A DNA stretch of 64,000 bases, taken from positions 248,001-312,000 of IMG/VR virus record IMGVR_UViG_3300017917_001342, one strand, 5' to 3'. Each line of letters opens with the position of its first letter. Position 1 is the stretch's first letter. Shown here one piece after another: positions 31,231 to 63,754 of the stretch. Under the pieces are notes generated by a model. It had not been told where the DNA came from, searched no databases, and saw nothing but the letters and a program-made list of their open reading frames with translations. Both the position numbers and the translations under genes were made by a program.

Positions 31231-32088
31231 TTACTTTACGCCAATGAACGGAGTAGCTTCGCCCGGGATCATAGTAGTAGGCAGTTTGCCATCCCAGACT
31301 TCTAGTGCTTTGTACTGCATCAGTTCAGCAGTAAGAGACTCGGCTAGCAGCTTGTTAGCTTTGGCCTGTGCCTCAGCAACCTTTAGAATACTGTTAGCCT
31401 GACCTTCTGCTTCTGCTACTTTTTTCTTAGCTTCTGCTTCTGCTTGTGCAATTTCATTCTGACGTTGCTGCGCCTTCTGTGTAGAAGCGTTTTTAGCATT
31501 GATGCTTGCAACCACATCGTCAGGTAGACGGATTTCGCTTAGCCAAGAAATAGATTCGATCTTAATACCGATTGGTGCAACCTGTGCCGCAACATCTTCT
31601 TGTACCGCAGCCAACAGTTGTGCTTTGCCTTCGCCGTAGACACTGTCTACAGTACGAGTACTAGCCTGTTTGTTCAAGCTGTCGCGAACCATGTTGTAAA
31701 GGAACGTGTCGGTAATTTCTTCAACACCGCGACGATACTTTTGGAACACAGTGCTGACCTTAGTCGGATCAATGCTGTAAGCAATACCAATGTCGGCGTT
31801 TGCAATGTTACCATCGCGAGTTTGGAAACTGATGCTTTCGTCGTTTGGTGAACCACAGCTTCCATCGTCGCCCGCAGTCCAGCAGTAGTTCTGCACAAAC
31901 GTAGGGAACAGATACAGTTCTTCGTTCCAACCAATCCAATAGCGACCAACACCTAGTTCTTCACTATCGATACCCTTTTCGCCACCAAGCAAGTAGACTT
32001 TAACACCTACGTGACCCGCTGGCACTGTGCTACATGCTGCTAGAGACCCTAGCAGCATGGTAAGCATAAAACCCTTACGAAAATTCAT
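31231..32088 (-). CDS. SPFH/band 7 (prohibitin-like) lipoprotein
   Basis: Lipobox LAAC; VPAGHVGVKV; AEAEA coiled coil; WDGKLP. Confidence 0.85.
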   Translation of the reverse strand: MNFRKGFMLTMLLGSLAACSTVPAGHVGVKVYLLGGEKGIDSEELGVGRYWIGWNEELYLFPTFVQNYCWTAGDDGSCGSPNDESISFQTRDGNIANADIGIAYSIDPTKVSTVFQKYRRGVEEITDTFLYNMVRDSLNKQASTRTVDSVYGEGKAQLLAAVQEDVAAQVAPIGIKIESISWLSEIRLPDDVVASINAKNASTQKAQQRQNEIAQAEAEAKKKVAEAEGQANSILKVAEAQAKANKLLAESLTAELMQYKALEVWDGKLPTTMIPGEATPFIGVK

Positions 32089-34983: not shown

Positions 34984-35285
34984 GTAAATCTAAACAGCAT
35001 AGCATCTTCTTCTGTGAGAAACCATACATGGCTTTCAACCCAAGCGTAGTTTGAGCCATAGGCATCATAGCACCATTGCATGATAGCAGGTGCATCTTTT
35101 GCTGCGGCTTTGTCAAGTTTGATTCCGTAATATCCTGCGTCTTTAAATGCAGCAGACGACACTATGCGTTTAGGATCAAGCTTGGTAAACACTAGACGAT
35201 ATCGATCGCGCGAAGGTACGGCATTGCGACCAACATCACGATGCTTTGAAAACCGAGCAGGTGTTCTAAGATTCTTATTGATCAT
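34968..35285 (-). CDS. Paralogue-family small protein
   Basis: WCYDAYG...FLTEEDAMLFRFTWG. Confidence 0.7.
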   Translation of the reverse strand: MINKNLRTPARFSKHRDVGRNAVPSRDRYRLVFTKLDPKRIVSSAAFKDAGYYGIKLDKAAAKDAPAIMQWCYDAYGSNYAWVESHVWFLTEEDAMLFRFTWGKY

Positions 35286-35294
35286 GTAGAGTCC

Positions 35295-35339
35295 TGTAGA
35301 TGCTATGCTACACTATAGCATCTACATAAACACAGTCAA
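35295..35339 (-). promoter_or_regulatory. Promoter overlapped by a 12-bp inverted repeat
   Basis: TTGACT-16-TATAGT; TGTAGATGCTAT-8-ATAGCATCTACA. Confidence 0.6.
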
Positions 35340-35349
35340 TACAGTATTA

Positions 35350-36186
35350 TCAGACTTCTAACACTAGTTTCGGATCAAACGCACCCTGTGGACGTTCTTT
35401 TGGATAACCTCTGGGATTGCAAACTACTCTGGTATTGCCAATCATGTAATCGTGACTGTCGTGTACATGTCCATGTATCCACAGCTTGAGATGATCATGA
35501 CTGACCATTAACCAATCTAAGTTGCTGACAAATGCACCATTCATATGCAGTTGATGTGCATACTTTGGATGAATACTACGAAAGCTCGGTGCATGATGAC
35601 CTACAACAACAGTGTTGCGCTTGTCTAGTTCAAGTTGTGTTTTTAGCCATTCAACAGTTTTACGATGTGTATCAGCAGTTACACTCGGTGGTAGTTTATA
35701 ATACAAATCACCTACATTGTAGGTAATTGATTTATAATCATTCATCATATCCTTAACAACCATTTCAGTCATAGGATCATAGTTGTTGAGGCTGCTCCAA
35801 ACTGTTGCACCAAGAAACACGGTATCGTTGATAACCATCTTGTCTTGTTCTAGAAGATGGATGTTACCGTGCCGAGCAGCTTCTGTACGAAGTATGTCAG
35901 CAGTGCGATCCCAACGTCCGCTGTAGTGTTCATGGTTGCCCATCACATAGAGCACAGTGTCAAACTCTTGACTTACCTGATGAAAAAAGCTTCGATATCT
36001 GATAGCATCGTCTGCATACCAGCCCTTTTGAATATAAGTGTAATCAATACCTGCGCTGGGATTTCTATGCATGTGTTCTGCAACACAGATGTCGCCTGCA
36101 AGTACCAGTACATCTGCACCTGCATTTTCTACTCGTATGTCTTCTGCAAATTCCAAATGCAGGTCACTGATCAACTGTATTTTCAT
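35350..36186 (-). CDS. Calcineurin-like metallophosphoesterase
   Basis: SDLH, AGD, GNHE, HH, HGHVH. Confidence 0.85.
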   Translation of the reverse strand: MKIQLISDLHLEFAEDIRVENAGADVLVLAGDICVAEHMHRNPSAGIDYTYIQKGWYADDAIRYRSFFHQVSQEFDTVLYVMGNHEHYSGRWDRTADILRTEAARHGNIHLLEQDKMVINDTVFLGATVWSSLNNYDPMTEMVVKDMMNDYKSITYNVGDLYYKLPPSVTADTHRKTVEWLKTQLELDKRNTVVVGHHAPSFRSIHPKYAHQLHMNGAFVSNLDWLMVSHDHLKLWIHGHVHDSHDYMIGNTRVVCNPRGYPKERPQGAFDPKLVLEV

Positions 36187-36241
36187 TTTTAACTCACTGT
36201 GTTAAGACATTAACTTAGCATCATACTGTGTTGATGTAAAG

Positions 36242-36694
36242 TTATCTAGCAGACTTTTTAGATTCCTCAGAATCGTGTACACGTTTGCGCAGATCGCTGC
36301 TGCTGAATCTATGATCTCGCTTGTTGAAATACAGTTGTATTCCGCGACGTCTGCAAATATCTTTGCCAGTGAAATCTTTGTCTTTGTATTCCACACCTAA
36401 TATACGAACGTCTATGCGATACATTTCCAATATATCTTCAAGATCTTTTTCTGTAGCATAGGGTATGATCTCGTCAACATACTTTACGCCTTTTAACTGT
36501 GTGTATCGTTCAACTATGGTTTGTACAGGTGTGTTTTTGTCTTTGCGATCAGCACTGGGATCCGTTTGCAATGCACAGATAAGATAGTCACACTGTTCTT
36601 TAGCTTCTCTTAGCATTTGAACATGTCCGGCATGCAATAGATCAAACGCAGATGCAGTAAATCCAATCTTTACAGTTTTTGTTATATCGTTCAT
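36242..36694 (-). CDS. tagD: Glycerol-3-phosphate cytidylyltransferase-like protein
   Basis: FDLLHAGH (HxGH), SSSDLR. Confidence 0.8.
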   Translation of the reverse strand: MNDITKTVKIGFTASAFDLLHAGHVQMLREAKEQCDYLICALQTDPSADRKDKNTPVQTIVERYTQLKGVKYVDEIIPYATEKDLEDILEMYRIDVRILGVEYKDKDFTGKDICRRRGIQLYFNKRDHRFSSSDLRKRVHDSEESKKSAR

Positions 36695-36768
36695 TTTTTA
36701 TCTTTGTTTATAATTGGTTGCACTTAGTAAAATGCTGCTGCACATATCGTGTACAGCAGCATTGATTT

Positions 36769-38622
36769 TTACACTGGATCAGCTTTTACATCGATTGGGC
36801 CATCATCGGGCGGCGATGATTGCGACTTGTAAATTATTTCACCCATTTTCATTAGGCTGTCACCTAGTGATTGCAATGCGGACTGCATTTCTTCAACAGT
36901 GTCTTTAGACAATGCTTCGCGTGTAGTAACAAGCTTTTCTTCTATTTCACTTTTCAGTTCTGCAGGAAGTTTGTCTTCATGTTCCTTGAGTTGCTTTTCA
37001 GCCTGATGGATCTGTGCTTCGCCTTGGTTACGAGTTTCAATTACAGCACGCTTCTTTTTGTCAGCTTCGGCATTTTCCTCAGCTTCTTTAACCATGCGAT
37101 TAATATCGTCCTCGCTAAGGCCGCCGCTGCTTTGAATTGTAACTTTTTGTTCTTTACCAGTTGCTACATCTTTTGCGCTTACATTTACGATACCGTTTGC
37201 GTCAATGTCAAATGTAACTTCGATCTGCGGAACGCCTCTAGGTGCTGGTGGGATGCCTTCAAGATTAAATGTAGCTAGAAGTTTGTTATCACGAGCAAGT
37301 TCGCGTTCACCTTGGCAAACCACAATCTGTACACCCGGCTGATTGTCTTGTGCAGTACTAAAGACCTGACTCTTCTTAGTAGGAATAGTAGTGTTGCGTT
37401 CAATCAGTTTGGTAAACACGCCACCGAGTGTTTCAATGCCCAGGCTAAGAGGTGTAACGTCTAGCAGTAGAACGTCTTTAACGTCGCCTTGTAGAACGCC
37501 ACCTTGAATAGCAGCACCCATAGCAACTACTTCATCTGGGTTAACACCCTGACTTGGGTCACGCTTGAACAGTTCTTTGACTGTTTGCTGTACCTTAGGC
37601 ATACGTGTTTGACCACCGACAAGAATTACTTCTGTAATATCTTCTGGCTTTAGCTTAGCATCAGCAAGTGCTTTACGGCAAGGTTCTTTAGTGCGTTCAA
37701 CTAGTTTTTCAACTAGACTTTCTAGTTTAGCACGAGTGAGTTTTACAGTAAGGTGCTTAGGACCTTCTGCCCCTGCGGTAATATATGGCAAGTTGATTTC
37801 AGTCTGCGAACTGCTACTAAGTTCAATTTTGGCTTTTTCAGCAGCTTCTTTGAGACGCTGTAGAGCCATGCCATCTTTGCGAAGGTCAACACCCTGTTCT
37901 TTTTTGAATTCGTCTGCAAGATAATCAACGATCTGCAAGTCGAAATCTTCACCGCCTAGCTGTGTATCGCCGTTGGTACTGAGAACTTCAAATACACCGT
38001 CGCCTAGTTCTAGAATACTGATATCAAATGTACCACCACCGAGGTCATAGACTGCAATCTTGCCACTGCCCTTTTTGTCAAGACCGTATGCTAGTGCAGC
38101 AGCAGTCGGTTCGTTGATAATACGTAGTACTTCTAGTCCGGCAATTTTACCTGCGTCTTTAGTAGCCTGACGCTGTGCATCGTTAAAGTATGCAGGTACA
38201 GTAATAACAGCCTGTGTTACTGCGGTACCGAGATAGCGTTCAGCAGTTTCTTTCATCTTGACAAGAATCTTTGCAGATACTTCTGCAGGACTCATTGCTT
38301 TGCCGTCAACTGAAACATATGCGTCGCCATTTGGTGCAGCTACAATTTCGTAAGGCAATAGTTTGCTGTCTTTTTGAACAGATGAATCTGTAAAACTACG
38401 ACCAATTAGTCGCTTTACAGCATGTAGTGTATTTTTTGGGTTTGTAACGCTTTGACGTTTTGCAGCAGCACCGACTAGCTGTTCACCGTCTTTTGCAAAT
38501 GCAACAATACTAGGTGTGGTGCGAGCACCTTCTGAATTTTCAATTACTTTGGCAGTTCCGCCATCCATGATACTTACACAACTGTTTGTTGTACCAAGGT
38601 CAATACCAATTACTTTGCTCAT
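36769..38622 (-). CDS. dnaK: Hsp70 chaperone DnaK
   Basis: [36 protein letters not shown]. Confidence 0.97.
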
Positions 38623-38680
38623 TTTATCTCCTCATAAAGCAAGATATGCAACATCTGCCTAAGGCCAGACACTGCATGTC
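38620..38680 (-). promoter_or_regulatory. ROSE-like RNA thermometer in dnaK 5' UTR
   Basis: UCUUGCU-uuaug-AGGAGA SD hairpin with bulged G, preceded by a second hairpin. Confidence 0.6.
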
Positions 38681-38702
38681 TAATATATATATTTTTTCTT
38701 AA

Positions 38703-39233
38703 TTAGTCAAGAGTTTGCTCAAGATATTGTGCCAGTTGAAATATATTAAGCTTATCTTCATTTACTTCTACCCAACCGACAACACTTATGCCTGCTTCTT
38801 TAACTGTATCTCTGCTACCACTTACTAGATGATGCCACCAGTGCAAAGGCTTATTGTGTTTCAACAATTTATATGCGCAGGTATCTGGCAATAGTCCGGG
38901 GGTGTCTATCACGTCTAGCGTAACTTTCATACAGTTACTTACACGCTGTTGACGATTGATATAGTCTGTGCATTTTGCAGTTTTAACATCAAGCAGTTTA
39001 CAGGCGATTTTACAACTTTTGACTTCATAGCCTTTCCAAGCTTTTACTAAACAGCAGCGCCCGCACCCATCGCAGAGTTCGTCCCACTGCTGCGTTGTCA
39101 TTGATTCAAGTGGAATAGTTTCCCACCATTTATCAACTGTAGCTGCTAAGGTCGACTGGTCGCATTCTAACGATCGGTGTTGGTTCTGCTGGTGGTTCGC
39201 CTCTGTTGATGCCGTGTACATGTTCCATACCAT
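38703..39233 (-). CDS. YcgN/UPF0260 (CxxCxxCC) cysteine-cluster protein
   Basis: WDELCDGCGRCC, LPDTCAY, WHHLVSG; start uncertain. Confidence 0.8.
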   Translation of the reverse strand: MVWNMYTASTEANHQQNQHRSLECDQSTLAATVDKWWETIPLESMTTQQWDELCDGCGRCCLVKAWKGYEVKSCKIACKLLDVKTAKCTDYINRQQRVSNCMKVTLDVIDTPGLLPDTCAYKLLKHNKPLHWWHHLVSGSRDTVKEAGISVVGWVEVNEDKLNIFQLAQYLEQTLD

Positions 39234-39582
39234 ATATGACTTTGCCCCACACAGTATATTGTCTATCTAAGAAACGTGCATCACCAAAACAGATAAAAAA
39301 TTGATCGCTAGCACTGTTTGGATCAGGAGTTCTTGCCATACTGCAAATACCTTCTGTGTGTGGTACATCATTAAATTCTGCTACAAGTTGCGGCAATGTT
39401 TTTTGTGTCCAACCGCCCTGTGCCATAAAGCCTTCTATAACACGATGAAACACTGTACCATCATAAAGTCCTTGTTCAGCTTGTGACAAAATCTGTGCAA
39501 CGTGGTTTGGTGCTTTATCTGGATAGCATTCTATCAAAACTACACCGGCTGGCAAATGCATTTTTAAAACTGGATTACTCAA
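39133..39582 (-). CDS. Cyclophilin-type peptidyl-prolyl isomerase
   Basis: FHRVIEGFMAQGG, SMART, QFFI, LDRQYTVWG. Confidence 0.92.
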   Translation of the reverse strand: MSNPVLKMHLPAGVVLIECYPDKAPNHVAQILSQAEQGLYDGTVFHRVIEGFMAQGGWTQKTLPQLVAEFNDVPHTEGICSMARTPDPNSASDQFFICFGDARFLDRQYTVWGKVIYGMEHVHGINRGEPPAEPTPIVRMRPVDLSSYS

Positions 39583-39657
39583 CGTAATAGATCCTTATAA
39601 TATAATAATAAGATTATAACTCAAAAGTTTAACATTGCAAAAATGGTAAATAACTCC

Positions 39658-40548
39658 ATGTGTATAATAGCTGCAAAATATTTCGATGGTGTCGGCTGGG
39701 TCGGTGTAAAAAACCGAGATAGAAATTATATACCGGAGATCAGCTTTAAACGTCAAAAGAAAAATGGCGTTGAAATCATGTTATTTTGGGATGACATTAC
39801 ACAATATTGCGAAGGTATGAACTCCGGTGGTGTTTGCATATTATCTGCAAGCCTTATGGTGTTAGATGACGAAAAAGAAATAACCAAACGTTCTAAAACA
39901 CCTAGCAAAGATGGCATTAAGATTAAAAAAGCACTGCAATATCCCAATGTCAAAGCCGTTGCAATGAGTTTAATCAAAAGCAAGCTGACCGGTAACACCA
40001 TCATTTTTGACAAAGACACCTGTTATCTGTTAGAAGGTGCGTGGCGCAGAGGCGGATATAGCGATAGAGATTATCGTTATAAAATACACGAAATACCTCG
40101 TGACAAGTTTGTTGCTAGAACCAATCACGGTGTATGGATAAAAGATGCAGGGTATCAACGCAATCCAGAGAATGATGCCGAAACACTCAGTCGTGTAAGC
40201 AGCGAAAGTCGCAAGGCAATCGGAGATCATGTTACTAAACGTGCTAATACTCCGGAAGAATTGATAGACGGTTTAGCAGGCACATGGACCAATAATCCGC
40301 AGTTAAACGGTTTGCGAACTGCTAAAGGCAAAAAGCAAATGCGTACTACAAGTCAAATCATGCTTATACCTAGTGAAGATACAATGTTTGTCAGACCAGT
40401 TCAAAGTCATATGACTTTTAACTTCTGGGATCTAAATAAACCTGACAATGATCTATGGGTAGAAATACTAAGTAACAGAGTATTACATCAGCATAAAAAG
40501 GAAGGTGGCGAACCACCGTTCCCTAAAATGAATCATTCTACAAAATAA
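39658..40548 (+). CDS. Ntn-hydrolase (NRDE/C45-like)
   Basis: Start MCIIA (Cys2 nucleophile), KNRD, EGMN, RTNHG; TAAATA just upstream. Confidence 0.65.
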   Translation: MCIIAAKYFDGVGWVGVKNRDRNYIPEISFKRQKKNGVEIMLFWDDITQYCEGMNSGGVCILSASLMVLDDEKEITKRSKTPSKDGIKIKKALQYPNVKAVAMSLIKSKLTGNTIIFDKDTCYLLEGAWRRGGYSDRDYRYKIHEIPRDKFVARTNHGVWIKDAGYQRNPENDAETLSRVSSESRKAIGDHVTKRANTPEELIDGLAGTWTNNPQLNGLRTAKGKKQMRTTSQIMLIPSEDTMFVRPVQSHMTFNFWDLNKPDNDLWVEILSNRVLHQHKKEGGEPPFPKMNHSTK

Positions 40549-41247
40549 ATGATATCAAATAAAAAAGTTCTACTATTTGGTGATAGCTTTGCAGATAAAA
40601 ATTCAGTCGGCGAATATGTGGGCTGGCCTGGTTTGCTAGAAAGCTATTATAAAGTTACAAATTTTGCAGTTTCTGGATCTAGTCCGGATCATCAATTAAA
40701 ATTGATGTTGGATTTTATAGAAAACACTGACAGTCACAGCTTCAAAGACACTGTGGTAATATTTTTAATATCCAGTCCAAATAGATTTGTTTTCAACTTT
40801 TATAAGAATCCGTCTGATCATCATTTATCAATTCATCTAGCTTATTACGAATCTGCAGACCTGTCATATCACGATGAATTGTCGCCGTATTTAAAATACA
40901 AAAAATTTGTAGAAGATTTTTACAAATATTATGCACTTAATGACGAATTTCAACTTACTCATGTGTTGAAAATATTAGGTATGCTGAATTTGTATTCAAC
41001 TCTGTTTGATAAAGTATTAGTTTGGCCTATATTTGAAAATTTGCCGTACAAATTACCAACGATGTCTGACAAAATGACATTTGTCAGTACACCGTTATTC
41101 AATATAGAGGGTAACCCTTACTGTAATGATGATAAACGACCAAACCATTTAATTAAAGAAAACCATCATATTATGGTATCGCAATTAATAGAATGGATAG
41201 AAACTAATCGATCAATTGATCTTGATCAGTTCAAATGGACCAAATAA
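40549..41247 (+). CDS. SGNH/GDSL-like protein
   Basis: FGDSF, N.AVSGSS, C-terminal NH. Confidence 0.55.
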   Translation: MISNKKVLLFGDSFADKNSVGEYVGWPGLLESYYKVTNFAVSGSSPDHQLKLMLDFIENTDSHSFKDTVVIFLISSPNRFVFNFYKNPSDHHLSIHLAYYESADLSYHDELSPYLKYKKFVEDFYKYYALNDEFQLTHVLKILGMLNLYSTLFDKVLVWPIFENLPYKLPTMSDKMTFVSTPLFNIEGNPYCNDDKRPNHLIKENHHIMVSQLIEWIETNRSIDLDQFKWTK

Positions 41248-41265
41248 AGTCTTAAAACTTTGGAT

Positions 41266-41577
41266 TTATTCTACAGGTGTAATATCTGCCTGCAACGGAA
41301 ATCCACTTTGTCTAGCAATTGTAACGGTTTCGTCACGTTTCTGAGATGCAACTTCGTGACTGTAAGTACCTGCAATACCTTTGTCATTGTTATGAATGTG
41401 CATCATAATATCCTGCGCTTCTTCAAAGGTCTTATGAAAAATTTGCATAAGAACAAGCACAACAAATTCCATACTGGTTTGATCATCATTGTATAACCAA
41501 ACATTCCACATTCTAGGTGGGGTAAGTGTAACTTTATCTACTACAGTGACAACAGTGCCTGTTTTAGTATTAGCCAA
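41266..41577 (-). CDS. clpS: Clp protease adaptor ClpS
   Basis: NDDQTSMEFVV, MMHIH, GFPL; TTG start with AGGAG SD. Confidence 0.9.
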   Translation of the reverse strand: MANTKTGTVVTVVDKVTLTPPRMWNVWLYNDDQTSMEFVVLVLMQIFHKTFEEAQDIMMHIHNNDKGIAGTYSHEVASQKRDETVTIARQSGFPLQADITPVE

Positions 41578-41603
41578 AATAATCTCCTAAGTTCTTTGTA
41601 AGT

Positions 41604-41635
41604 ATGCGGTTGACCGCTAGTGCAGTCAACCGCAT
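41604..41635. terminator. Hairpin after hsp20
   Basis: atgcggttgac..gtcaaccgcat. Confidence 0.5.
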
Positions 41636-41642
41636 GTTAAAT

Positions 41643-42119
41643 TTAGTTGTTGTCTGTACTTACTTTGACATCGACGATATTACCGTTTGTAATAGGAATA
41701 CTACGACCCTTAGCTGGTTCGGGTATTTCTCGCAGTAATTCAATTACCAGTAGACCGTCTTCAAGTTTAGCAGATACGACTTTAATATGTTCTGCTAGTG
41801 TGAATTGTCGCTCAAAATCGCGTGCTGCAATACCACGATGCAGCCAATTGCGTTCTGGTTGGTCTGTGTTTTTACTGCCTTTGACGCTTAGTATGCGATC
41901 ATTTGTAATATCGATACTGAGTTCGTCTAACTTAAACCCGGCCACTGCTAGCTCAAGACGATATGTGTCACCGTCACAGTCTAGGTTGTAAGGTGGGTAA
42001 CCGTTTGCTTGTGTAACATTGATGTTGTTGATACGTGTAAGCATAGGCTCAAAACCTATAGCAAAACGATTTAGATCTCTAAAAAGATCATCGATCATGA
42101 GAGATGGTAATTGACGCAT
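41643..42119 (-). CDS. Small heat-shock protein Hsp20/IbpA
   Basis: YPPYN, LAVAGF, HRGIAARDFERQFTLAE, DGLL. Confidence 0.93.
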   Translation of the reverse strand: MRQLPSLMIDDLFRDLNRFAIGFEPMLTRINNINVTQANGYPPYNLDCDGDTYRLELAVAGFKLDELSIDITNDRILSVKGSKNTDQPERNWLHRGIAARDFERQFTLAEHIKVVSAKLEDGLLVIELLREIPEPAKGRSIPITNGNIVDVKVSTDNN

Positions 42120-42176
42120 TTATACCTCCTAATATAGCGAAGCACTACCTTAAGTGGGCCTCGAAAGCGCCCACAC
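42117..42176 (-). promoter_or_regulatory. ROSE-like RNA thermometer in hsp20 5' UTR
   Basis: CUUCGCU-auauu-AGGAGG; upstream GUGGGC/GCCCAC hairpin; promoter TTGACT-17-TAAATA at 42181-42209. Confidence 0.65.
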
Positions 42177-42212
42177 TATATATTTAATAACGTGTGAGCG
42201 CAAAGTCAAGAG

Positions 42213-43466
42213 TTAGTTGGCAGCTTCTGCGGTTTTATTGTATATTTTCAATGGGTCGCTGCGTTCGTTAACAACATCTTCTGTAACGACAATCCTACGA
42301 ATACCTTCGCCGGCCATAGACGGTAGTTCAAATTGCGAACGTAGTAGAATCTTTTCTAAAATACTACGCAGCCCTCTTGCACCAGTTTTACGTTCCATAG
42401 ACTGCTTTGCAATTGCACGGAGCGCATCAGTTTGAAATTCAAGGTCAATTCCTTCAATTTTAAACATTTTTTGGTACTGTTTAACAATTGCGTTCTTTGG
42501 TTCGGTGAGAATGTTAACTAGATCGTCTTCTTTGAGATCACAGAATGGTACCATAACTGGAATACGACCAATAAGTTCTGGGATAAGTCCGAACTTAATA
42601 AGATCTTCCTGCCTAGTTTGTGAGATCAATTCAAACGTATCTTTGTCACTGAGTGACTCACCCGGCAACGATGCACCAAAGCCAATGCCAGCACCCTTGT
42701 CTAGTCGCTTGCTGATGATATCAGTTAGCCCAACAAATGCACCACCTAGGATGAACAAGATATTCTTTGTGTTGATTAGAATATATTCACCATGTGGATT
42801 TTTACGACCGCCGGTTGGTGGTACTTTGACTTCGCAGCCTTCGATCATTTTAAGCAGTGCTTGCTGAACACCTTCACCGCTTACATCGCGTGTAATACTA
42901 GTGTTTTCGCTTTTACGGCCTTTTTTGTCAATTTCGTCAATGTACACAATACCACGTTCTGTACGCTCAACGTCTTGATCAGCAGCTTGATATAGTCGTG
43001 CAATAGCTTCTTCAACATCAAGTCCAACATATCCGCTTTCTGTAAGACTGGTAGCATCAATGATAACCATTGGAACATCAAGCAGTTTTGCAGCTTGTTG
43101 AATGATGTAGGTTTTACCAACACCAGTTGGTCCGATGAACATTAGGTTGGTTTTATCAATCTCAACATCGTCAATCACTGGATTGTTGATGCGCTTCATG
43201 TGAGAATAGATTGCAACACTCAGCATCATCTTAGCTTGGTGCTGGCCAACCATTCGTTCGTCGAGATACGCCATAATTTTATCGGGTGTAAGTACACCAA
43301 AATCTTTTGGCTGTTTGACGAATTCTTCTTTAAGAACCCCGTAACATAGTTCTACACATTCGTTACAAATGTATACATCGTTACCACTGATCAGCTTATT
43401 GACCTCTGTTTGATTCTTACCGCAGAAACTGCAAGAATATGTAGGACGTGAACTATCCCTGGCCAT
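42213..43466 (-). CDS. clpX: ATP-dependent Clp protease ATPase ClpX
   Basis: CSFC..CNEC zinc-binding domain, [30 protein letters not shown]. Confidence 0.95.
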
Positions 43467-43469
43467 AGA

Positions 43470-45221
43470 TTAATCCTCTGTTTTATTGTTTGCGTGATTT
43501 TGTAATCTCTGCTGATGCAGAGTTTTGAGTCTGTTTAAAAATTCAACGGTAGTTTGTGTATCTGTCACTATTTGTTCTACTACAGGCAATCTGTCTATCA
43601 ATTGCCATTCTAATTTGTCGTCTTTTGATACTACTTGGTTGTCGACCTGATTGTCAACAGTGGGAATGTCATCTTCAACTACAGGTGTGCGAACAATAGG
43701 TTCTTCAAAAGACATTTCATATTGTGTAGTATTTTGTTCGGCAACTATAGTTAAATCATTTGATACACCATCGAACGATATAGTATGGTTTGATGGTGTT
43801 GCTGCTGGTTCAACCACTCTAGTTGTCTCAGTTACAGCAGTAGAACTTAAAACTGTGTTTAGTTTAGATATTTCTGTTTGAAGAGTGTTTATAGCCGGTA
43901 CTAGTTGTTCAATTCCTTGAATTACAACGGGCTCTGTTGTTTTTTCAGGTTGAACACTGTGTTCTTCTTTGGGTTCAATAAACGGTTGTTCAGCAGTGAC
44001 TGATTGGATAGGCGGTGCATTTTTATTTTTGCGTAACCCATATTCTGCAAGACCTTGGTTTGCAGCTATCAACATTAATATTGCCAAAGGATCAAACACT
44101 ACAATTATAACAAGTATAACACCGCGAACTGCTTTTTCTAAAAGATTAGTGTCCGGATTATTACCGTACATCATTTCAGCGATGTATTTTAGTGGCCCGA
44201 CTTCTACTTCAAGTTTTCTATATTCAGCTTCTAAACCGAATTTCTGTTCAGTTAGTGTAGCAATTTCTTTTTCAGCAGCAGCAATTGCAGATTTTTGTTT
44301 TTCTATGTCGGCTGCAACTTGACTGTTGTCGGTTGTACCTAACTGTTGCCTTAATCGGTTAATTAATTCATTTGAGTTGGCAATTTCTTTTTCTGCAATA
44401 CTACGCAAACGTTGAATCTCTGCACGAGCAGCATCAATTGTAGGCGACGTAATTTTAGCACTTTCTGCTGCAATTGACTCAGTTAATCGTTGTTTTTCTG
44501 CTAGCTGTGCAGTTTTATATGCTTCAATTGCACGTTCTGTTGCAGGACCCAGATTGCCATCTGCCTTGACACCTACTAATGCCTGTACTGCTTTGACATT
44601 ACCTGCTGTGATATTTTCTTCTATGCTTTTGAGATTTTGATCAATTGCAGCAACTTGATCTTTATATAAATTTGCAGTAGTGCCTAGTCGTTCTTCTTCT
44701 TTTGCGATAATAGTGTTTTGTTCATCTATTGCAGGTTGAATGCGACTATATGCACTGTCAATGCGAGTTTGTTCTCTATCAATTTGTGCTTGTATTTCAG
44801 AGTCTTGGTTTACTCCGGCGGTTTCTAATTTTGCAATTTCTTTTTCTGCTTCAGATACAACAGTTTCTTGACGTTTAATCTGTGTATCTATTTGTTCAAG
44901 TCGTGCCACACCTTCTGTTGCTTTAGCTGTTTGGTCGATATGTGCTTTGGACAGATATCCAAAAATACCCATACTGGTAATGCACATGAGAATTACCACA
45001 GCCGCGCTGAGATATGCTTTCAATGCAAATGGTGTTTTATTCCAGTTATTGTATAACCAACTTGCAACAATAACTTTGCTGGCTTCCAATATACCAGCCA
45101 TGATGATAATAGGTATGAAAGCACCTGCGAAAATGCTTGCCATACCTATTACACTGTAATAACCTGCTACAGCACTAAGCCCAATTGCTGCTACAAACAT
45201 AAGCACGGTTGACAACATCAA
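43470..45221 (-). CDS. Membrane coiled-coil protein with peptidoglycan-binding-like insert
   Basis: Three N-terminal TMs; VKAVQALVGVKADGNLGPATERAI; EVGPLKY; VFDPLA TM. Confidence 0.7.
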   Translation of the reverse strand: MMLSTVLMFVAAIGLSAVAGYYSVIGMASIFAGAFIPIIIMAGILEASKVIVASWLYNNWNKTPFALKAYLSAAVVILMCITSMGIFGYLSKAHIDQTAKATEGVARLEQIDTQIKRQETVVSEAEKEIAKLETAGVNQDSEIQAQIDREQTRIDSAYSRIQPAIDEQNTIIAKEEERLGTTANLYKDQVAAIDQNLKSIEENITAGNVKAVQALVGVKADGNLGPATERAIEAYKTAQLAEKQRLTESIAAESAKITSPTIDAARAEIQRLRSIAEKEIANSNELINRLRQQLGTTDNSQVAADIEKQKSAIAAAEKEIATLTEQKFGLEAEYRKLEVEVGPLKYIAEMMYGNNPDTNLLEKAVRGVILVIIVVFDPLAILMLIAANQGLAEYGLRKNKNAPPIQSVTAEQPFIEPKEEHSVQPEKTTEPVVIQGIEQLVPAINTLQTEISKLNTVLSSTAVTETTRVVEPAATPSNHTISFDGVSNDLTIVAEQNTTQYEMSFEEPIVRTPVVEDDIPTVDNQVDNQVVSKDDKLEWQLIDRLPVVEQIVTDTQTTVEFLNRLKTLHQQRLQNHANNKTED

Positions 45222-45277
45222 ATATCCCTCACGACAATTAACTATTGTACCGAATAACTGCTATTTGTCAACGACTA

Positions 45278-46435
45278 TTAGGCGTTAGCTATTTGAGTAA
45301 CTGCTATATTTCCTTCAACTGTTTGTATGTTTGCAACTGTATCAATAGCAGCCGCAGTAACCTGTTGCACCACTGTTTGTACTGGTGTATATGCAACATT
45401 ACTGCCGCCTATTACCACATTGCTGTTCCAAATGTTTCTGTTGGTAATCCAAGTGCTAGTTAATGCTCTAGCGATTAAACGCTTGAGCGCCGCAGGACCT
45501 ACTAACTCTGTGTTTACGGTTTCCGGCTCCCCTGCAACTGTGCGAGTAACTAGCTGATCAATGTGTTCGATACCAACAGTCCATGCTACTGTGGTTGGCG
45601 GTGCATTACCAGATACTGTTGATCCGGTAAGTGCAATCGCACCGTAGACTGTGGCTGTTAAATTGCTTTCAATATAACTTGCAACACCTGTCCAACGCAT
45701 ATTACCACGTTCAATGTCCTTTGCCTGTGCAAAGGTCATGTTTGGTATATAAACTGTGCTTGCTGCAAATCCAATATCGGATGCTGCACTGCCAGTGTCT
45801 GCGCCAAAATAGATAGGTGACAAGCTTTGACTATTAAGCTGAATCTTGTTTGTATATGGTGTTGCATATACACCAGTCTGTTCACTTACTGCATTTATGG
45901 TATTGCATACGCCTGCTAGTGTTAATGCACCAGTGACAAAAGTAATTGTCACACCGTTGATAACAATAGTTTCAGCGTTGGACGGGCTACTAAATGATCC
46001 ACCATAGATTGGACTTTGGTATGTAAATGCACCAACTGGTAAACCTATTGTAGTTAAAGGTGTACCCGAGACGTTTGCAAGTACAATTGGCAATGTGCTT
46101 TGTGGCCATGCACTTTGTAATGTAATGTAGTTTGTTGCAGTTATAGATGCCATTACATTTGTATACTGGCTCATTAAATTAAAACGGTCTACAATGTCAC
46201 TTACAGTGTCGCCAGAGTCAAATGGTCCTATAATATAACCGTTGCAACTCAATGTATCACCTGTTGTCATTGTAGGCGATGCGTTGTAACTGGATACCGC
46301 AACCATTGTGTGATATTGGTTACTGGTGTACGGTGATATACCACCAGCAGTAGTATCTGAACCTGTATAATTTGTTGGACTATTAAGAGTCCATGTTACC
46401 CTGTAGTAAGTCGGTGTTGGTTTAAAAGTGGCCAT
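45278..46435 (-). CDS. Probable virion structural protein
   Basis: T/S/G-rich; repeated IVINGVTITF..IN-like units; TAAATA late motif at 46464-46469. Confidence 0.6.
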   Translation of the reverse strand: MATFKPTPTYYRVTWTLNSPTNYTGSDTTAGGISPYTSNQYHTMVAVSSYNASPTMTTGDTLSCNGYIIGPFDSGDTVSDIVDRFNLMSQYTNVMASITATNYITLQSAWPQSTLPIVLANVSGTPLTTIGLPVGAFTYQSPIYGGSFSSPSNAETIVINGVTITFVTGALTLAGVCNTINAVSEQTGVYATPYTNKIQLNSQSLSPIYFGADTGSAASDIGFAASTVYIPNMTFAQAKDIERGNMRWTGVASYIESNLTATVYGAIALTGSTVSGNAPPTTVAWTVGIEHIDQLVTRTVAGEPETVNTELVGPAALKRLIARALTSTWITNRNIWNSNVVIGGSNVAYTPVQTVVQQVTAAAIDTVANIQTVEGNIAVTQIANA

Positions 46436-46557
46436 CTAATGATTCTCCGGGCTATGCTTGGAATATTTAGTCAAAATGACTGTACAGATACCAAATCAAT
46501 AAATATCGAGTAGTTGCATATTTGCACTACATAGATTATAATTTCTTTATAAGGCAA

Positions 46558-46600
46558 AGTGGTCTAAGACGCTCATCCCACTCTAAATACTCTGCGTGTC
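46558..46600 (+). ncRNA. Candidate preQ1-I-like riboswitch
   Basis: AGUGG-UCUAAGACGCUCAUC-CCACU-CUAAAUA..GCGU pseudoknot directly upstream of queD. Confidence 0.5.
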
Positions 46601-46627
46601 GTCAAACTTACTTATGAAAGGCAAGAG

Positions 46628-47143
46628 ATGACAAAATACGAACCAGTACATTACAAGTACACCAGCACCAAAGAATACCACGACGCATTTCCCTGTGCTT
46701 ATCGACAGTGGCGTGCAGACAGTCATTGTAATCTAATTCATGGTTACAGTTTTAACATGAAATTTTACTTCGGTACCAATGATCTTGATGCTCGTAATTG
46801 GGCTGCTGATTATGGTGGACTAAAAGAACTAAAACGTTTCTTAGAAGATCAATTTGACCACACTCTGCTGGTTGCACAAGACGATCCAGAATTTGAATTC
46901 TACAAAGAAATGGAACGTCGTAAGCTGGCAAAACTCACTGTATTACCAAAACTAGGTTGTGAAGGTCTAGCAGACACACTTTACAAATATGTAAACGGTG
47001 TTTACATTCCAGACATGTGGGGTCCAGGCGAAGCTGCAAGACTGTGGTGTTACAGAGTCGAAGTTCGAGAAACACAAAGCAATATGGCTTTCCGCGAAGG
47101 TCATAGAGAATGGGAAGAAGATCTTTTTGCAGATTACAAGTAA
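46628..47143 (+). CDS. queD: 6-pyruvoyl-tetrahydropterin synthase / QueD-like protein
   Basis: SHCNLIHGYS, DYGGLK, FDH, EVRET. Confidence 0.8.
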   Translation: MTKYEPVHYKYTSTKEYHDAFPCAYRQWRADSHCNLIHGYSFNMKFYFGTNDLDARNWAADYGGLKELKRFLEDQFDHTLLVAQDDPEFEFYKEMERRKLAKLTVLPKLGCEGLADTLYKYVNGVYIPDMWGPGEAARLWCYRVEVRETQSNMAFREGHREWEEDLFADYK

Positions 47144-57344: not shown

Positions 57345-58037
57345 TTACTTGCGTTGTCCGAGCAGCTTGAGCAAGTACAACATTAGGTTTACAAAGTCTA
57401 GGTATAGACTCAATGCACCCATGATACCAGCTTTTGCACGTTCTTCGCCACTGGTAAGGTAATAGACTTCTTTGACTTTCTGTGTGTCATATGCAGTCAA
57501 CCCCACAAAGATCAACACACCGATTACACTGATCGCAAAGTCAAATGCAGCACTTTGCATAAAAAGGTTGACAATGCTTGCTACGATCAATCCGATTAGA
57601 CCCATTAGCAGGAACCCACCAAGACTGGTTAGATCCTTTTTAGTAGTATAACCGTAGATACTCATAGAAAGAAACATCACAGCAGTAATACCAAATACTT
57701 GGAATACAGATCCCAGTTGGTACATAAGGAACACTGTGCTAAGGCTAACGCCCATAACAGCAGCGTATGCATAGAACATTGTTTGTAGTGCAGATGCACT
57801 AAACTTTTCAAATCCAAAGCTCATCACCAGCACCATTGCCAACGGTGCAAAGACAAACAGGAATGCCTGCGGTCCGCCTAGGAACAGTGCGGTAAGTTCC
57901 GGCACAGTTGCAACTAGATACGCAACAACACCGCTGACTACAAGACCAATGCCCATGTTGTTGTAAACACTGAGCATATGTTCACGCAACCCGTTATCAA
58001 TTACAGCAGTTGCAGTATGACCATTTAGTTTTTCCAT
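57345..58037 (-). CDS. Bax inhibitor-1/YccA family membrane protein
   Basis: Seven TMs; GYTTKKDL, AYDTQK, ALSLYLDFVNL. Confidence 0.9.
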   Translation of the reverse strand: MEKLNGHTATAVIDNGLREHMLSVYNNMGIGLVVSGVVAYLVATVPELTALFLGGPQAFLFVFAPLAMVLVMSFGFEKFSASALQTMFYAYAAVMGVSLSTVFLMYQLGSVFQVFGITAVMFLSMSIYGYTTKKDLTSLGGFLLMGLIGLIVASIVNLFMQSAAFDFAISVIGVLIFVGLTAYDTQKVKEVYYLTSGEERAKAGIMGALSLYLDFVNLMLYLLKLLGQRK

Positions 58038-63131: not shown

Positions 63132-63384
63132 CGTGTGTTAGTTATACAAGAAACGACTGCGTTGAACAAGAGTTTTTATTTTCATATGCTTAAAACAATG
63201 AAATCGGAATGTATTTTTACATCCCGACTCACTGTATTCGTTTATAATATAATAATTTAGAGTCTGACAAATTCAACGCCTTCGGCGTGGCTTGGCAGTA
63301 ATATAATAATTTATCTTGACGGGTACTTTATATTTACTAGTCTTGATAGGTATGTAGTTAATATGTTATCATCATTGGTGTAGT

Positions 63385-63718
63385 AAAACGGCAGTTTGAT
63401 TCTGTTTCCAAGTCCAAACTGCCAAAAACTCATTTACGCTGCGAGAGCGTAAGAAGGTGCAACGTTATCGTTTGCAACTGTTGATTTTCTTGCGTTAACC
63501 GAGCTTGCGCCGGGCAACTCCACTCACATAGTCCGCCTGTCGATCCTATTTCGAGCCCATCAAGAATACACACCGTGATCTAAGGCCGGAATTCCCGCCC
63601 CTTGACGTATCGAAGTCGCTGTCCAGTTTCCCGAACTATTTCGATACATGTGTACTCTTGGTGGACCCGCTGGGTACCGCCCCCAGGTCCAGAACGTGTT
63701 CCGTTTGCTTCAACGTTA
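63385..63718 (-). ncRNA. ssrA: Two-piece (circularly permuted) tmRNA
   Basis: Acceptor piece ending GGACCTGGGGGCGGTACCCAGCGGGTCCACCA (63659); coding piece starting GGGCTCGAAATAGGATCGAC (63558); G3.U70 pair; tag ANDNVAPSYALAA* at 63434-63475; terminal hairpin 63390-63423. Confidence 0.9.
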
Positions 63719-63723
63719 CAGTG

Positions 63724-63754
63724 TATTTATAGCTTCACTTTTTTGGTTTGTCAA
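63724..63754 (-). promoter_or_regulatory. tmRNA promoter (sigma70 with overlapping late motif)
   Basis: TTGACA-17-TATAAATA. Confidence 0.7.

What the first reader, a model, noticed from the sequence alone, without database searches (positions are those of the whole stretch)
36769..43466. Phage proteostasis cluster
Seen within 7 kb: DnaK, YcgN, cyclophilin, Ntn-hydrolase, ClpS, Hsp20 and ClpX. tmRNA, YccA and SPFH lie elsewhere in the window. No ClpP, ClpA, DnaJ or GrpE is present here. Inference: the phage supplies the specificity parts (tag, adaptor, unfoldase) and redirects host proteases. In Caulobacter-type hosts ClpXP controls the cell cycle.
Basis: partly seen in the sequence, partly recalled or inferred. 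Interest (0 to 1): 0.6.

Follow-up and report, generated by a model that had tools for sequence, protein, structure and literature searches.

The report
Megaphage chaperone and Clp protease cluster
A 519-kb freshwater megaphage really does carry a tight cluster of protein-folding and protein-degradation genes, but the rest of its genome also encodes the protease core (ClpP), ClpA, a DnaJ-like protein and GroEL/ES, so it brings a nearly complete protein-quality-control kit rather than only adaptors for host proteases; phages with such kits are already known.

Summary
The window is part of a 518,643-bp virus record with terminal repeats, 55 tRNAs, RIIA and tail-fibre genes. It is not host contamination.

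Outside the window the same genome encodes a bona fide ClpP, a ClpA with a ClpP-docking loop, a J-domain protein, a ClpB-like ATPase, peptide deformylase and GroEL/GroES. Absent are GrpE, SmpB, SspB, Lon and FtsH.

ClpX-Hsp20-ClpS, with a membrane coiled-coil gene upstream, is an old viral module. It is syntenic in most of 80 IMG/VR contigs, usually as ClpX-IF3-S21-Hsp20-ClpS, and this phage has lost IF3 and S21.

Viral ClpX sequences lie outside a single clade of 58 cellular ClpX. DnaK, in contrast, is a later capture from Alphaproteobacteria (72-75% identity).

All catalytic and docking motifs are intact.

The closest known cases are Agrobacterium phage Atu_ph07 (seven Clp-family genes, DnaJ, Hsp20) and phage G (ClpXP, tmRNA).

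Verdict: a real feature and a new, unusually complete member of a known kind. The function is inferred, not shown.

The parts
36769..38622 (-). DnaK (Hsp70), 617 aa
   Evidence: NF001413 1019 bits (cut-off 648) and Pfam HSP70 901 bits. Nearest named relatives are Alphaproteobacteria at 72-75% identity; unnamed metagenome relatives reach 77-96%. Found only in the nearest relatives: 3 of 19 larger records.
38703..39233 (-). YcgN-family cysteine-cluster protein. The start is uncertain: the ORF overlaps the cyclophilin ORF by 101 nt.
   Evidence: NCBIfam YcgN models, best 151 bits (cut-off 167), and PHROG 33999. Overlap seen. Function unknown; no known link to proteostasis.
39133..39582 (-). Cyclophilin-type peptidyl-prolyl isomerase, 149 aa, TTG start
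   Evidence: Pfam Pro_isomerase 119.5 bits. Relatives L007-L014 are 70-83% identical.
39643..40548 (+). Cys-Ntn amidohydrolase of the AAT / bile-salt hydrolase / NAAA fold. The likely start is at 39658, giving a Met-Cys N-terminus.
   Evidence: Invariant M6-C7, D26, N161 and R225 in 9 homologues. AF2 pLDDT 74. Foldseek best hits 2x1c, 3hbc and 6dxw. Atlas neighbours carry PF03417 or PF02275. Absent from the nearest relative, L007.
40549..41247 (+). orf232, a strain-variable insertion; weak GDSL-like match only
   Evidence: Pfam GDSL E 0.006, below cut-off. GC 0.31. Skipped (40535 to 41265) in contigs of three DNA runs from three studies. No homologue in the related loci.
41266..41577 (-). ClpS, the N-degron adaptor of ClpAP, 103 aa, TTG start
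   Evidence: Pfam ClpS 96 bits. Best solved relative is Caulobacter ClpS 3dnj, with the pocket residues N-D-D-x-T-x-M and His conserved. Predicted to bind the phage ClpA N-domain: ipSAE 0.83 against a best control of 0.12.
41643..42119 (-). Small heat-shock protein (Hsp20 / IbpA-like), 158 aa
   Evidence: Pfam HSP20 62 bits, PHROG 432 116 bits, IbpA model 122 bits below its cut-off. Syntenic with ClpX and ClpS in most related loci.
42213..43466 (-). ClpX unfoldase, 417 aa
   Evidence: NF003745 551 bits (cut-off 359). Zinc-finger cysteines, Walker A/B, GYVG, pore-2, IGF and sensor-2 motifs are all present; the RKH loop reads RKN. Member of a viral clade outside all 58 cellular ClpX.
43470..45221 (-). 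orf583, a conserved membrane plus coiled-coil protein. Its stop lies 3 nt before the ClpX start. Function unknown.
   Evidence: A match lies just upstream of ClpX in nearly all 80 related loci. The consensus shows N-terminal hydrophobic helices, a long helix and a C-terminal hydrophobic helix. Homologues occur in Pelagibacter phage Mosig, XacN1, SCTP-2 and RsoM2USA.
31231..32088 (-). SPFH/Band-7 protein
   Evidence: Pfam Band_7 101 bits; PHROG 200 275 bits.
57345..58037 (-). YccA / Bax-inhibitor-1 family membrane protein
   Evidence: Pfam Bax1-I 202 bits.
63343..63751 (-). Permuted (two-piece) alphaproteobacterial-type tmRNA, tag ANDNVAPSYALAA
   Evidence: ARAGORN. Rfam RF01849 97 bits and RF04321 101 bits, both above gathering score. 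No SmpB in the genome.

Best explanation
The region is the main protein-quality-control locus of a 519-kb freshwater megaphage that is a distant relative of Agrobacterium phage Atu_ph07. The phage probably infects an alphaproteobacterium.

Together with genes elsewhere in the genome, the locus gives the phage a nearly self-sufficient chaperone and protease network. The elements outside the window are:
- ClpP at C1:54544-55152
- ClpB-like ATPase at C1:186238-188370
- GroES/GroEL at C1:345319-347180
- DnaJ-like protein, peptide deformylase and ClpA, contiguous at C1:485366-489044

Shown by sequence: every component keeps its catalytic and docking motifs.

Inferred mechanism:
- ClpX hexamers dock through their IGF loops on phage (or host) ClpP. 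They degrade proteins that end in the LAA-type tag written by the phage tmRNA, along with other substrates.
- ClpS binds the N-domain of the phage ClpA and feeds N-degron substrates to ClpAP.
- Hsp20 holds unfolding proteins. DnaK refolds them with the phage J-protein, the ClpB-like ATPase and the host's GrpE.
- Cyclophilin and GroEL/ES assist folding.

Inferred purpose: to keep folding, disaggregation and clearance capacity high while a very large phage proteome and virion are made, at a time when host chaperone synthesis may fall away. GrpE, SmpB and FtsH have to come from the host.

History:
- ClpX-(IF3-S21)-Hsp20-ClpS is an ancient viral module linked to translation genes.
- This lineage lost IF3 and S21.
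- It added DnaK from Alphaproteobacteria, with YcgN and cyclophilin beside it. Where those two came from was not traced.
For: - Identities and scores.
- Motifs: ClpX, ClpA IGF loop, ClpP triad and N-terminal loops, DnaJ-like HPD, ClpS pocket.
- The ClpS-ClpA N-domain model passes the mark: ipSAE 0.83, best control 0.12, runs agree in at least 87% of contacts, partner pLDDT at least 84. That mark was reached by 51 of 78 solved complexes and 2 of 108 mismatched pairs.
- Whole-genome inventory.
- Viral nature and completeness.
- Synteny in 80 viral loci, with IF3-S21 in most of them.
- All cellular ClpX form one side of a branch (SH-aLRT 99.9). Phage-to-alphaproteobacterial identity is 50-57%, against a median of 81% among Alphaproteobacteria.
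- DnaK is 72-75% identical to Alphaproteobacteria.
- The same gene order appears on a 9.2-kb contig from an independent freshwater metagenome, and short contigs of an RNA-seq library lie on DnaK, YcgN/cyclophilin, Hsp20 and ClpX.
- Precedents: Atu_ph07 (PMC6102473), phage G ClpXP found in particles (PMC12484599), bS21 phages with Hsp20 and Clp nearby (PMC9723584).
Against: - No experiment shows that any of these proteins is made or active.
- The RNA-library contigs are short, 2-8% divergent, and could be DNA carry-over.
- The purpose is inference.
- ClpX reads RKN where cellular ClpX reads RKH, so its substrate choice may differ from the textbook one.
- NBD1 of the ClpB-like protein has lost the Walker A lysine, so disaggregase activity is uncertain.
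- YcgN, the Ntn hydrolase and orf232 have no known proteostasis role and may be bystanders.
- The complex prediction may pass from memory of solved ClpS-ClpA structures, and it cannot tell phage ClpA from host ClpA.
Confidence: 0.7

Rival explanations
1. One reading: the phage supplies only the specificity parts (tag, ClpS, ClpX) and redirects the host's ClpP and ClpA, and with them host regulated proteolysis such as cell-cycle control.
For: - The window itself holds no ClpP, ClpA, DnaJ or GrpE.
- G003, a relative rated 100% complete, keeps ClpX-Hsp20-ClpS with no ClpA or ClpB and only a divergent ClpP-like protein. The core can therefore work with host parts.
- Iyer et al. proposed that phage ClpS feeds the host ClpAP (PMC7824862).
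- IGF loops and ClpP pockets are conserved enough for mixed complexes.
Against: - This genome has its own ClpP above the curated cut-off, a ClpA with a docking loop, and a J-protein.
- ClpS pocket residues are canonical.
- Nothing ties the system to cell-cycle substrates.
- The host is unknown beyond a probable alphaproteobacterium.
Confidence: 0.15
2. A host-takeover or counter-defence device: the phage Clp machines mainly destroy host proteins, such as defence proteins, regulators or antitoxins, or recycle host protein into amino acids. In this view they do not look after phage proteins.
For: - The viral ClpX lineage is old and distinct from cellular ClpX.
- It carries a clade-specific RKN change in a loop that, in E. 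coli, contributes to substrate choice (the role of the loop is from my own knowledge of the ClpX literature).
- The module sits next to phage translation factors in relatives, which fits a takeover of gene expression.
Against: - No candidate adaptor or substrate was found.
- Holdase and foldase genes (Hsp20, DnaK, GroEL/ES, cyclophilin) in the same genome point to folding support rather than destruction only.
Confidence: 0.12
3. ClpX acts mainly without a protease, as a remodelling chaperone for phage replication or assembly complexes (as with MuA or lambda O in E. coli). The neighbours are unrelated cargo.
For: - In Atu_ph07, Phosso and AP-J-162, clpX lies beside topoisomerase genes, and the authors suggested a replication role.
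- Topoisomerase genes lie 17 kb away in this window.
Against: - The IGF loop is conserved in nearly all viral ClpX, which argues for ClpP docking.
- The conserved neighbours are Hsp20, ClpS, IF3 and S21, not replication genes.
Confidence: 0.08
4. The cluster is host DNA: contamination or a chimeric assembly.
For: DnaK is 72-75% identical to alphaproteobacterial DnaK.
Against: - GC of the genes (0.38-0.44) equals that of the phage (0.41).
- The flanks are phage-specific genes.
- The same order is found in IMG/VR relatives and on an independent 9.2-kb contig.
- ClpX is only 50-57% identical to any sampled cellular ClpX.
Confidence: 0.01

Closest known systems
Agrobacterium phage Atu_ph07 (490 kb) and Sinorhizobium phages Phosso and AP-J-162
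   Same: - Huge phages of alphaproteobacteria that encode ClpX, ClpA, ClpB, ClpP, ClpS, DnaJ and Hsp20 (PMC6102473; PMC11242549).
- ClpA lies next to DnaJ, as here.
- Their ClpX is placed next to the window's clade in the tree, with weak support (80).
   Different: - Their Clp genes are scattered. ClpX sits beside IF3 and topoisomerase, without Hsp20 or ClpS next to it.
- They have no DnaK.
- Here IF3 and S21 are lost and DnaK, YcgN and cyclophilin lie beside the module.
Bacillus megaphage G
   Same: It encodes adjacent ClpP and ClpX and a tmRNA. Both Clp proteins were detected by mass spectrometry of particles (PMC12484599).
   Different: - Gram-positive host.
- ClpP and ClpX form one pair.
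- No ClpS, ClpA or DnaK is reported in the passages read.
- Its ClpX is 52% identical to this one.
bS21-encoding phages of Chen et al. 2022
   Same: Hsp20 (n=127) and Clp protease families (n=50 and 47) were counted within ten genes of phage bS21. The authors suggested control of the proteostasis network (PMC9723584). This matches the ClpX-IF3-S21-Hsp20-ClpS order seen here in relatives.
   Different: - The fixed five-gene order and its span across the viral ClpX clades are not stated in the passages I read.
- This phage has lost S21 and IF3.
Huge phages with DnaK (moraphages, Lak phages, Al-Shayeb huge phages)
   Same: Phage DnaK acquired from the host lineage. Moraphage DnaK is nested in Flavobacteriaceae (PMC12619734). 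DnaK is also present in Lak and LR7565xx records.
   Different: Here the donor lineage is alphaproteobacterial, and DnaK sits beside the Clp/Hsp20 module. Identity to those phage DnaKs is only 50-57%, so this was an independent capture.
Bacterial ClpXP / ClpAPS, DnaK-DnaJ-GrpE-ClpB, IbpAB and tmRNA-SmpB systems
   Same: Same components, same motifs, presumably the same mechanics.
   Different: - GrpE, SmpB, SspB, Lon and FtsH are missing.
- ClpX belongs to a separate viral clade and carries RKN.
- The ClpB-like protein lacks the N-domain and an intact NBD1.
- The gene order differs from the bacterial clpP-clpX arrangement (that bacterial order is from my own knowledge; not tested here).

Membership tests
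ClpX (AAA+ unfoldase of ClpXP) | Scores above the curated equivalog cut-off | tested here: met
   NF003745 550.8 bits against 359; TIGR00382 519.5 against 370.75.
ClpX (AAA+ unfoldase of ClpXP) | N-terminal C4 zinc finger, Walker A/B, GYVG pore-1 loop, sensor-2 | tested here: met
   Pfam zf-C4_ClpX 67 bits. Alignment to E. coli ClpX 8e91. Motif table across 85 viral, 30 alphaproteobacterial and 41 other bacterial sequences.
ClpX (AAA+ unfoldase of ClpXP) | IGF loop that docks on ClpP | tested here: met
   GIGFGA aligned to E. coli GIGFGA. Actual binding to ClpP was not tested.
ClpX (AAA+ unfoldase of ClpXP) | RKH loop | tested here: not met
   It reads RKN here and in all 17 members of the window's clade. 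It reads RKH in 30 of 30 alphaproteobacterial and 40 of 41 other bacterial ClpX.
ClpX (AAA+ unfoldase of ClpXP) | Groups with cellular ClpX in a tree | tested here: not met
   The 58 cellular sequences form one side of a branch (SH-aLRT 99.9), and all viral rows are on the other side. This is a quick tree with no root.
ClpS adaptor | ClpS domain with N-degron pocket residues | tested here: met
   Pfam 96 bits against 23. NCBIfam equivalogs score below their cut-offs (86.9 against 112). N-D-D-x-T-x-M and His are conserved against Caulobacter ClpS 3dnj.
ClpS adaptor | Binds the N-domain of ClpA | tested here: met
   Prediction only: ipSAE 0.83, best control 0.12. Like complexes are solved, so the pass may reflect likeness rather than show binding.
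ClpP (self-compartmentalised serine protease) | Curated score and Ser-His-Asp triad | tested here: met
   NF001368 277.6 bits against 249. The head-maturation model scores only 101 against 120. The triad is aligned to solved ClpP 7m1m. The gene lies outside the window, at C1:54544-55152.
DnaK-DnaJ-GrpE system | DnaK equivalog score | tested here: met
   NF001413 1019 bits against 648; TIGR02350 967.7 against 822.55.
DnaK-DnaJ-GrpE system | J-domain partner with an HPD motif in the same genome | tested here: met
   A 290-aa protein at C1:488172-489044, with an HPD motif and C-terminal domains but no zinc-finger region. Its best solved match is Thermus DnaJ2. All DnaJ equivalogs score below their cut-offs.
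DnaK-DnaJ-GrpE system | GrpE nucleotide-exchange factor in the same genome | tested here: not met
   No PF01025 match in the 518,643-bp record, while the control genomes ring.
tmRNA-SmpB trans-translation | tmRNA model above the gathering score, with a tag ending in LAA | tested here: met
   RF01849 97.2 bits against 50; RF04321 101.2 against 47. ARAGORN tag ANDNVAPSYALAA.
tmRNA-SmpB trans-translation | SmpB in the same genome | tested here: not met
   No PF01668 match.
Cys-Ntn hydrolases (AAT / choloylglycine hydrolase / NAAA clan) | Four-layer Ntn fold with an N-terminal Cys nucleophile | tested here: met
   Foldseek hits to 2x1c, 3hbc and 6dxw at probability 1.00 and TM 0.42-0.53. The Met-Cys start is invariant in 9 homologues. 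No Pfam family reaches threshold, and the substrate is unknown.
Atu_ph07-like megaphage Clp set | ClpX directly followed by IF3 | tested here: not met
   IF3 and S21 are absent from the whole genome (tblastn). They are present after ClpX in most relatives and in Atu_ph07 and Phosso.
Atu_ph07-like megaphage Clp set | ClpA next to DnaJ; ClpB, ClpP, ClpS and Hsp20 also present | tested here: met
   The DnaJ-like protein, PDF and ClpA are contiguous at C1:485366-489044. Compare gp292 and gp293 of Atu_ph07.

The most novel reading that the evidence does not exclude
ClpX-IF3-S21-Hsp20-ClpS may be one ancient, virus-specific functional unit. In this reading the phage pairs its own translation-initiation parts with its own unfoldase, holdase and N-degron adaptor. 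ClpX in this unit belongs to a lineage that split from all cellular ClpX, and in this sub-clade (RKN loop) it has a changed substrate preference. The module would then set which nascent or tagged proteins survive during infection, rather than merely adding capacity. This phage would be the variant that swapped the translation half for a DnaK-cyclophilin folding half.
Probability: 0.2. Interest if true: 0.65.

Novelty: new member of a known kind. Interest (0 to 1): 0.42.

Why it matters
Very large phages are known to carry pieces of the cell's protein-quality-control machinery. How complete and how independent these sets are, and whether they serve folding of phage proteins or attack on the host, remains open.

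This genome is one of the fuller sets seen here. It holds two Clp proteases with an adaptor, Hsp70/Hsp40, a ClpB-like ATPase, a small heat-shock protein, GroEL/ES, a prolyl isomerase, a deformylase and a tmRNA.

Comparison with relatives gives three testable points:
- An old viral ClpX lineage.
- A fixed ClpX-IF3-S21-Hsp20-ClpS gene order.
- A clear list of what is still borrowed from the host (GrpE, SmpB, FtsH).

These make reconstitution experiments with phage and host parts straightforward to design.

Tried and rejected
- Megablast of 10 kb against 50,697 phage records found nothing beyond a conserved DnaK stretch in mislabelled host contigs.
- Sigma-70-like promoter and terminator scans of 35000-47000 gave counts no higher than shuffles (38 against 35.7; 13 against 8.7). 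No operon structure is claimed.
- The T4 late-promoter word TATAAATA is not enriched (2 found, 4.3 expected).
- A shared word, CTCTTGNCTTT, upstream of Hsp20 and orf385 has only two exact copies, which is too few to interpret.
- orf583 could not be assigned. It has no Pfam or PHROG family beyond a sub-threshold PG_binding_3 hit. The Atlas and AF2 models are all-helical with pTM 0.32, so no fold search was run on it.
- The search for related loci in bacterial genomes returned a haphazard set of phyla, because it is driven by peptide patterns. I therefore added 41 evenly drawn alphaproteobacterial genomes. One of them, G050, is unpublished. It contributes only one identity value (52%) to the 50-57% range and no sequence to the tree.
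- The ClpP homologue search returned only unnamed metagenome proteins at 76-100% identity, so the origin of ClpP was not resolved.
- The large representative-protein search was not used, because no claim here rests on absence of relatives.

Full report
**What is there**

The window is bases 248001-312000 of a 518,643-bp IMG/VR virus record. The record has an 89-bp terminal repeat, 40.7% GC, 55 tRNA genes and one tmRNA. The window also holds T4-type RIIA, a collagen-like tail-fibre gene, type II topoisomerase subunits, an RNA ligase and a CCA-adding enzyme. It is phage DNA.

- DnaK: 1019 bits against a curated cut-off of 648.
- A YcgN-family protein.
- A cyclophilin.
- ClpS.
- An IbpA-like Hsp20.
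- ClpX: 551 bits against 359.

The 'Ntn hydrolase' (39643-40548, +) has no family hit. Three results support it:
- Nine homologues share an invariant Met-Cys N-terminus.
- An AlphaFold model (pLDDT 74, pTM 0.79) matches isopenicillin-N acyltransferase, bile-salt hydrolases and NAAA.
- Atlas neighbours carry PF03417 or PF02275.

It is a Cys-Ntn amidohydrolase, not a proteasome-like protease, and nothing links it to proteostasis.

SPFH (31231-32088), YccA/Bax-inhibitor-1 (57345-58037) and a permuted alphaproteobacterial-type tmRNA (63343-63751, tag ANDNVAPSYALAA) are also confirmed.

Five of the genome's 14 proteostasis genes within 6.7 kb is rare by chance: 49 of 200,000 random placements.

**The rest of the genome changes the reading**

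Elsewhere the same record encodes:
- A ClpP above the curated subfamily cut-off (277.6 against 249). It scores far better than against the ClpP-related head-maturation model, and Ser, His and Asp align to solved ClpP.
- A 764-aa ClpA (889 bits on the ClpA equivalog, a little under its cut-off). It has both AAA modules, an N-domain, and IGF where E. coli ClpA has its IGL ClpP-docking loop.
- A 290-aa J-protein with HPD and C-terminal substrate-binding domains but no zinc-finger region. It is contiguous with peptide deformylase and ClpA.
- A 710-aa ClpB-like protein without an N-domain, whose first Walker A lysine is replaced.
- GroES-GroEL.

GrpE, SmpB, SspB, Lon and FtsH were not found, although each search rang in control genomes.

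So the phage carries both Clp proteases whole. It has to borrow only the nucleotide-exchange factor of DnaK, the protein partner of its tmRNA, and the membrane protease that YccA and SPFH proteins modulate in E. coli. That last link is from general knowledge, not tested here.

**Are the parts intact?**
- ClpX keeps the four zinc-finger cysteines, Walker A and B, the GYVG and pore-2 loops, the IGF loop and sensor-2.
- The one departure is RKN in place of RKH. All 17 members of the window's clade share it. It is found in none of 30 alphaproteobacterial ClpX and none of the 41 other bacterial ClpX, where 40 read RKH and one reads neither.
- ClpS keeps the N-degron pocket residues of Caulobacter and E. 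coli ClpS.
- A complex prediction of ClpS with residues 1-150 of the phage ClpA scored ipSAE 0.83 against a best control of 0.12. The three runs agreed in at least 87% of contacts, and partner pLDDT was at least 84. That mark was reached by 51 of 78 solved complexes and 2 of 108 mismatched pairs.
- Because ClpS-ClpA complexes are solved, this pass shows likeness. It does not prove binding, and it cannot separate phage ClpA from host ClpA.

**Relatives and history**

A scan of IMG/VR with ClpX gave 80 loci at 48-85% identity.
- In most of them the order is orf583, ClpX, then Hsp20 and ClpS.
- In most, translation initiation factor IF3 and ribosomal protein S21 lie between ClpX and Hsp20.
- Cultured Atu_ph07 and Phosso share ClpX-IF3.
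- The window's genome has no IF3 or S21 anywhere, and the fetched locus of its nearest relative L007 has none either.
- DnaK, YcgN and cyclophilin occur only in the nearest relatives.
- In L007 the Ntn gene and orf232 are absent, so ClpX, Hsp20, ClpS, cyclophilin, YcgN and DnaK follow each other on one strand.

In trees, 36 and then 58 cellular ClpX form one side of a branch (SH-aLRT 99 and 99.9). The second set includes 22 ClpX drawn evenly from Alphaproteobacteria.
- All viral sequences lie on the other side, in several deep clades.
- The window sits in a well-supported viral clade placed next to Atu_ph07 and Phosso, with weak support (80).
- Alphaproteobacterial ClpX are 71-91% identical to each other (median 81%) but only 50-57% identical to the phage protein.
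- These are quick, unrooted trees, so 'one ancient origin' is not proven. Recent capture from a host is excluded.

DnaK is the opposite case. After a group of unnamed metagenome proteins at 77-96%, the nearest named proteins are all alphaproteobacterial at 72-75%. Other huge-phage DnaKs are only 50-57% identical.

Among 17 larger related records, a high-scoring ClpP was seen in six.
- G003 (452,799 bp, rated 100% complete) has ClpX, Hsp20 and ClpS with no ClpA, ClpB or DnaK.
- Its only ClpP relative is a divergent 184-aa ClpP-like protein below all cut-offs.
- The conserved core can therefore live without a phage ClpA, and probably uses host partners there.

**Environmental data**

Near-identical sequence occurs in pond, lake and other aquatic metagenomes of 15 studies.
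- A 9.2-kb contig of an independent run carries the same order, apart from a clean absence of orf232.
- Two further studies show the same 729-nt gap.
- orf232 also has the lowest GC (0.31), so it is a recent insertion.
- One freshwater RNA-seq library has short contigs (160-350 nt, 92-98% identical) on DnaK, YcgN/cyclophilin, Hsp20 and ClpX, and none on the Ntn gene, orf232 or ClpS.
- This is a weak hint of transcription in a close relative, since DNA carry-over cannot be excluded.

**How it most likely works**

Shown: the components exist, are intact, are viral, and are partly ancient.

Inferred from what the families are known to do:
- ClpX with ClpP clears tmRNA-tagged and other substrates.
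- ClpS with ClpA and ClpP clears N-degron substrates.
- Hsp20, DnaK, the J-protein, the ClpB-like ATPase and host GrpE handle aggregates.
- Cyclophilin, deformylase and GroEL/ES support maturation and folding.

The purpose I think most likely (0.7) is to secure folding and clearance capacity for a very large phage proteome and virion during infection. It remains plausible for the core module in relatives, and for the host-dependent parts.

**Comparison with what is known, and novelty**

Phage-borne Clp and chaperone sets are already described:
- Atu_ph07 has seven Clp-family genes, DnaJ and Hsp20 (PMC6102473).
- AP-J-162 has clpX beside IF3 and topoisomerase (PMC11242549).
- Phage G has ClpP-ClpX and a tmRNA, with both proteins found in particles (PMC12484599).
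- Jumbo-phage surveys list ClpS, ClpP, ClpX, ClpA, Hsp20 and DnaJ, and proposed that phage ClpS feeds host ClpAP (PMC7824862).
- bS21 phages have Hsp20 and Clp genes nearby (PMC9723584).
- DnaK and DnaJ occur in moraphages (PMC12619734).

I therefore rate this a new member of a known kind. It is notable for its completeness and for the tight DnaK-to-ClpX cluster.

Three things are not stated in the passages I read:
- The fixed ClpX-IF3-S21-Hsp20-ClpS order across many viral clades.
- The separation of viral ClpX from all sampled cellular ClpX.
- The clade-specific RKN loop.

These are leads, not established findings.

Noticed in passing
window 40549-41247 (+): orf232 (GC 0.31, sub-threshold GDSL match) is cleanly absent in close strains (about 2-10% divergent). 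Contigs of three DNA runs from three studies join 40535 to 41265 with 25 other letters in between.
   Followed up: partly
related loci L013-L086; e.g. L021:11236-12181 and L052:11256-12060: IF3 and ribosomal protein S21 genes sit between ClpX and Hsp20 in most related viral contigs. The window's genome has lost both, and neither was found in the fetched L007 locus.
   Followed up: yes
window 43470-45221 (-): A conserved membrane plus coiled-coil protein of unknown function always lies directly upstream of ClpX; here it ends 3 nt before the ClpX start. Homologues are 'hypothetical' in Pelagibacter phage Mosig, XacN1, SCTP-2 and RsoM2USA.
   Followed up: partly
G000:C1:129519-129593 (outside the window): One of the 55 phage tRNAs has the anticodon CTA, which would read the TAG stop codon. 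The genes studied here read open under table 11.
   Followed up: no
G000:C1:186238-188370 (outside the window; L003:166-2298): The ClpB-like ATPase lacks the N-domain. Its first nucleotide-binding domain has Val for the Walker A lysine and ED for the Walker B DE, while the second domain is intact.
   Followed up: partly
window 38703-39233 and 39133-39582 (-): The YcgN ORF overlaps the end of the cyclophilin ORF by 101 nt in another frame. Homology to YcgN begins at residue 34, so the true start is unclear.
   Followed up: no
L114 and L128 (contigs of bacterial MAGs): Contigs filed under a Chitinophagales MAG and a Gammaproteobacteria MAG carry viral-type ClpX, and L114 has S21 right after it. 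They are probably phage contigs binned into the MAGs.
   Followed up: partly
window 42202-42212 and 46617-46627 (-): The word CTCTTGNCTTT occurs exactly only twice in the window. Both copies are intergenic and upstream of minus-strand genes (Hsp20 and orf385). This is too few to call a motif.
   Followed up: partly
window 3432-8639 (+): A 1735-aa ORF with no Pfam or PHROG match lies next to a 973-aa collagen-repeat tail-fibre gene.
   Followed up: no
window 46628-47143, 50504-51109, 52323-52943, 56629-57306, 58402-59571: Other auxiliary genes lie near the cluster: a QueD-like 6-pyruvoyl-tetrahydropterin synthase, two nitroreductases, a PP-loop ATPase beside tRNA-Met, and a CCA-adding / poly(A) polymerase family enzyme.
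   Followed up: no
L149 (G018:C28:45613-46810): An alphaproteobacterial MAG holds, besides its normal ClpX, a second ClpX-like gene split into two pieces. It is 57% identical to the phage ClpX. Its origin was not examined.
   Followed up: no
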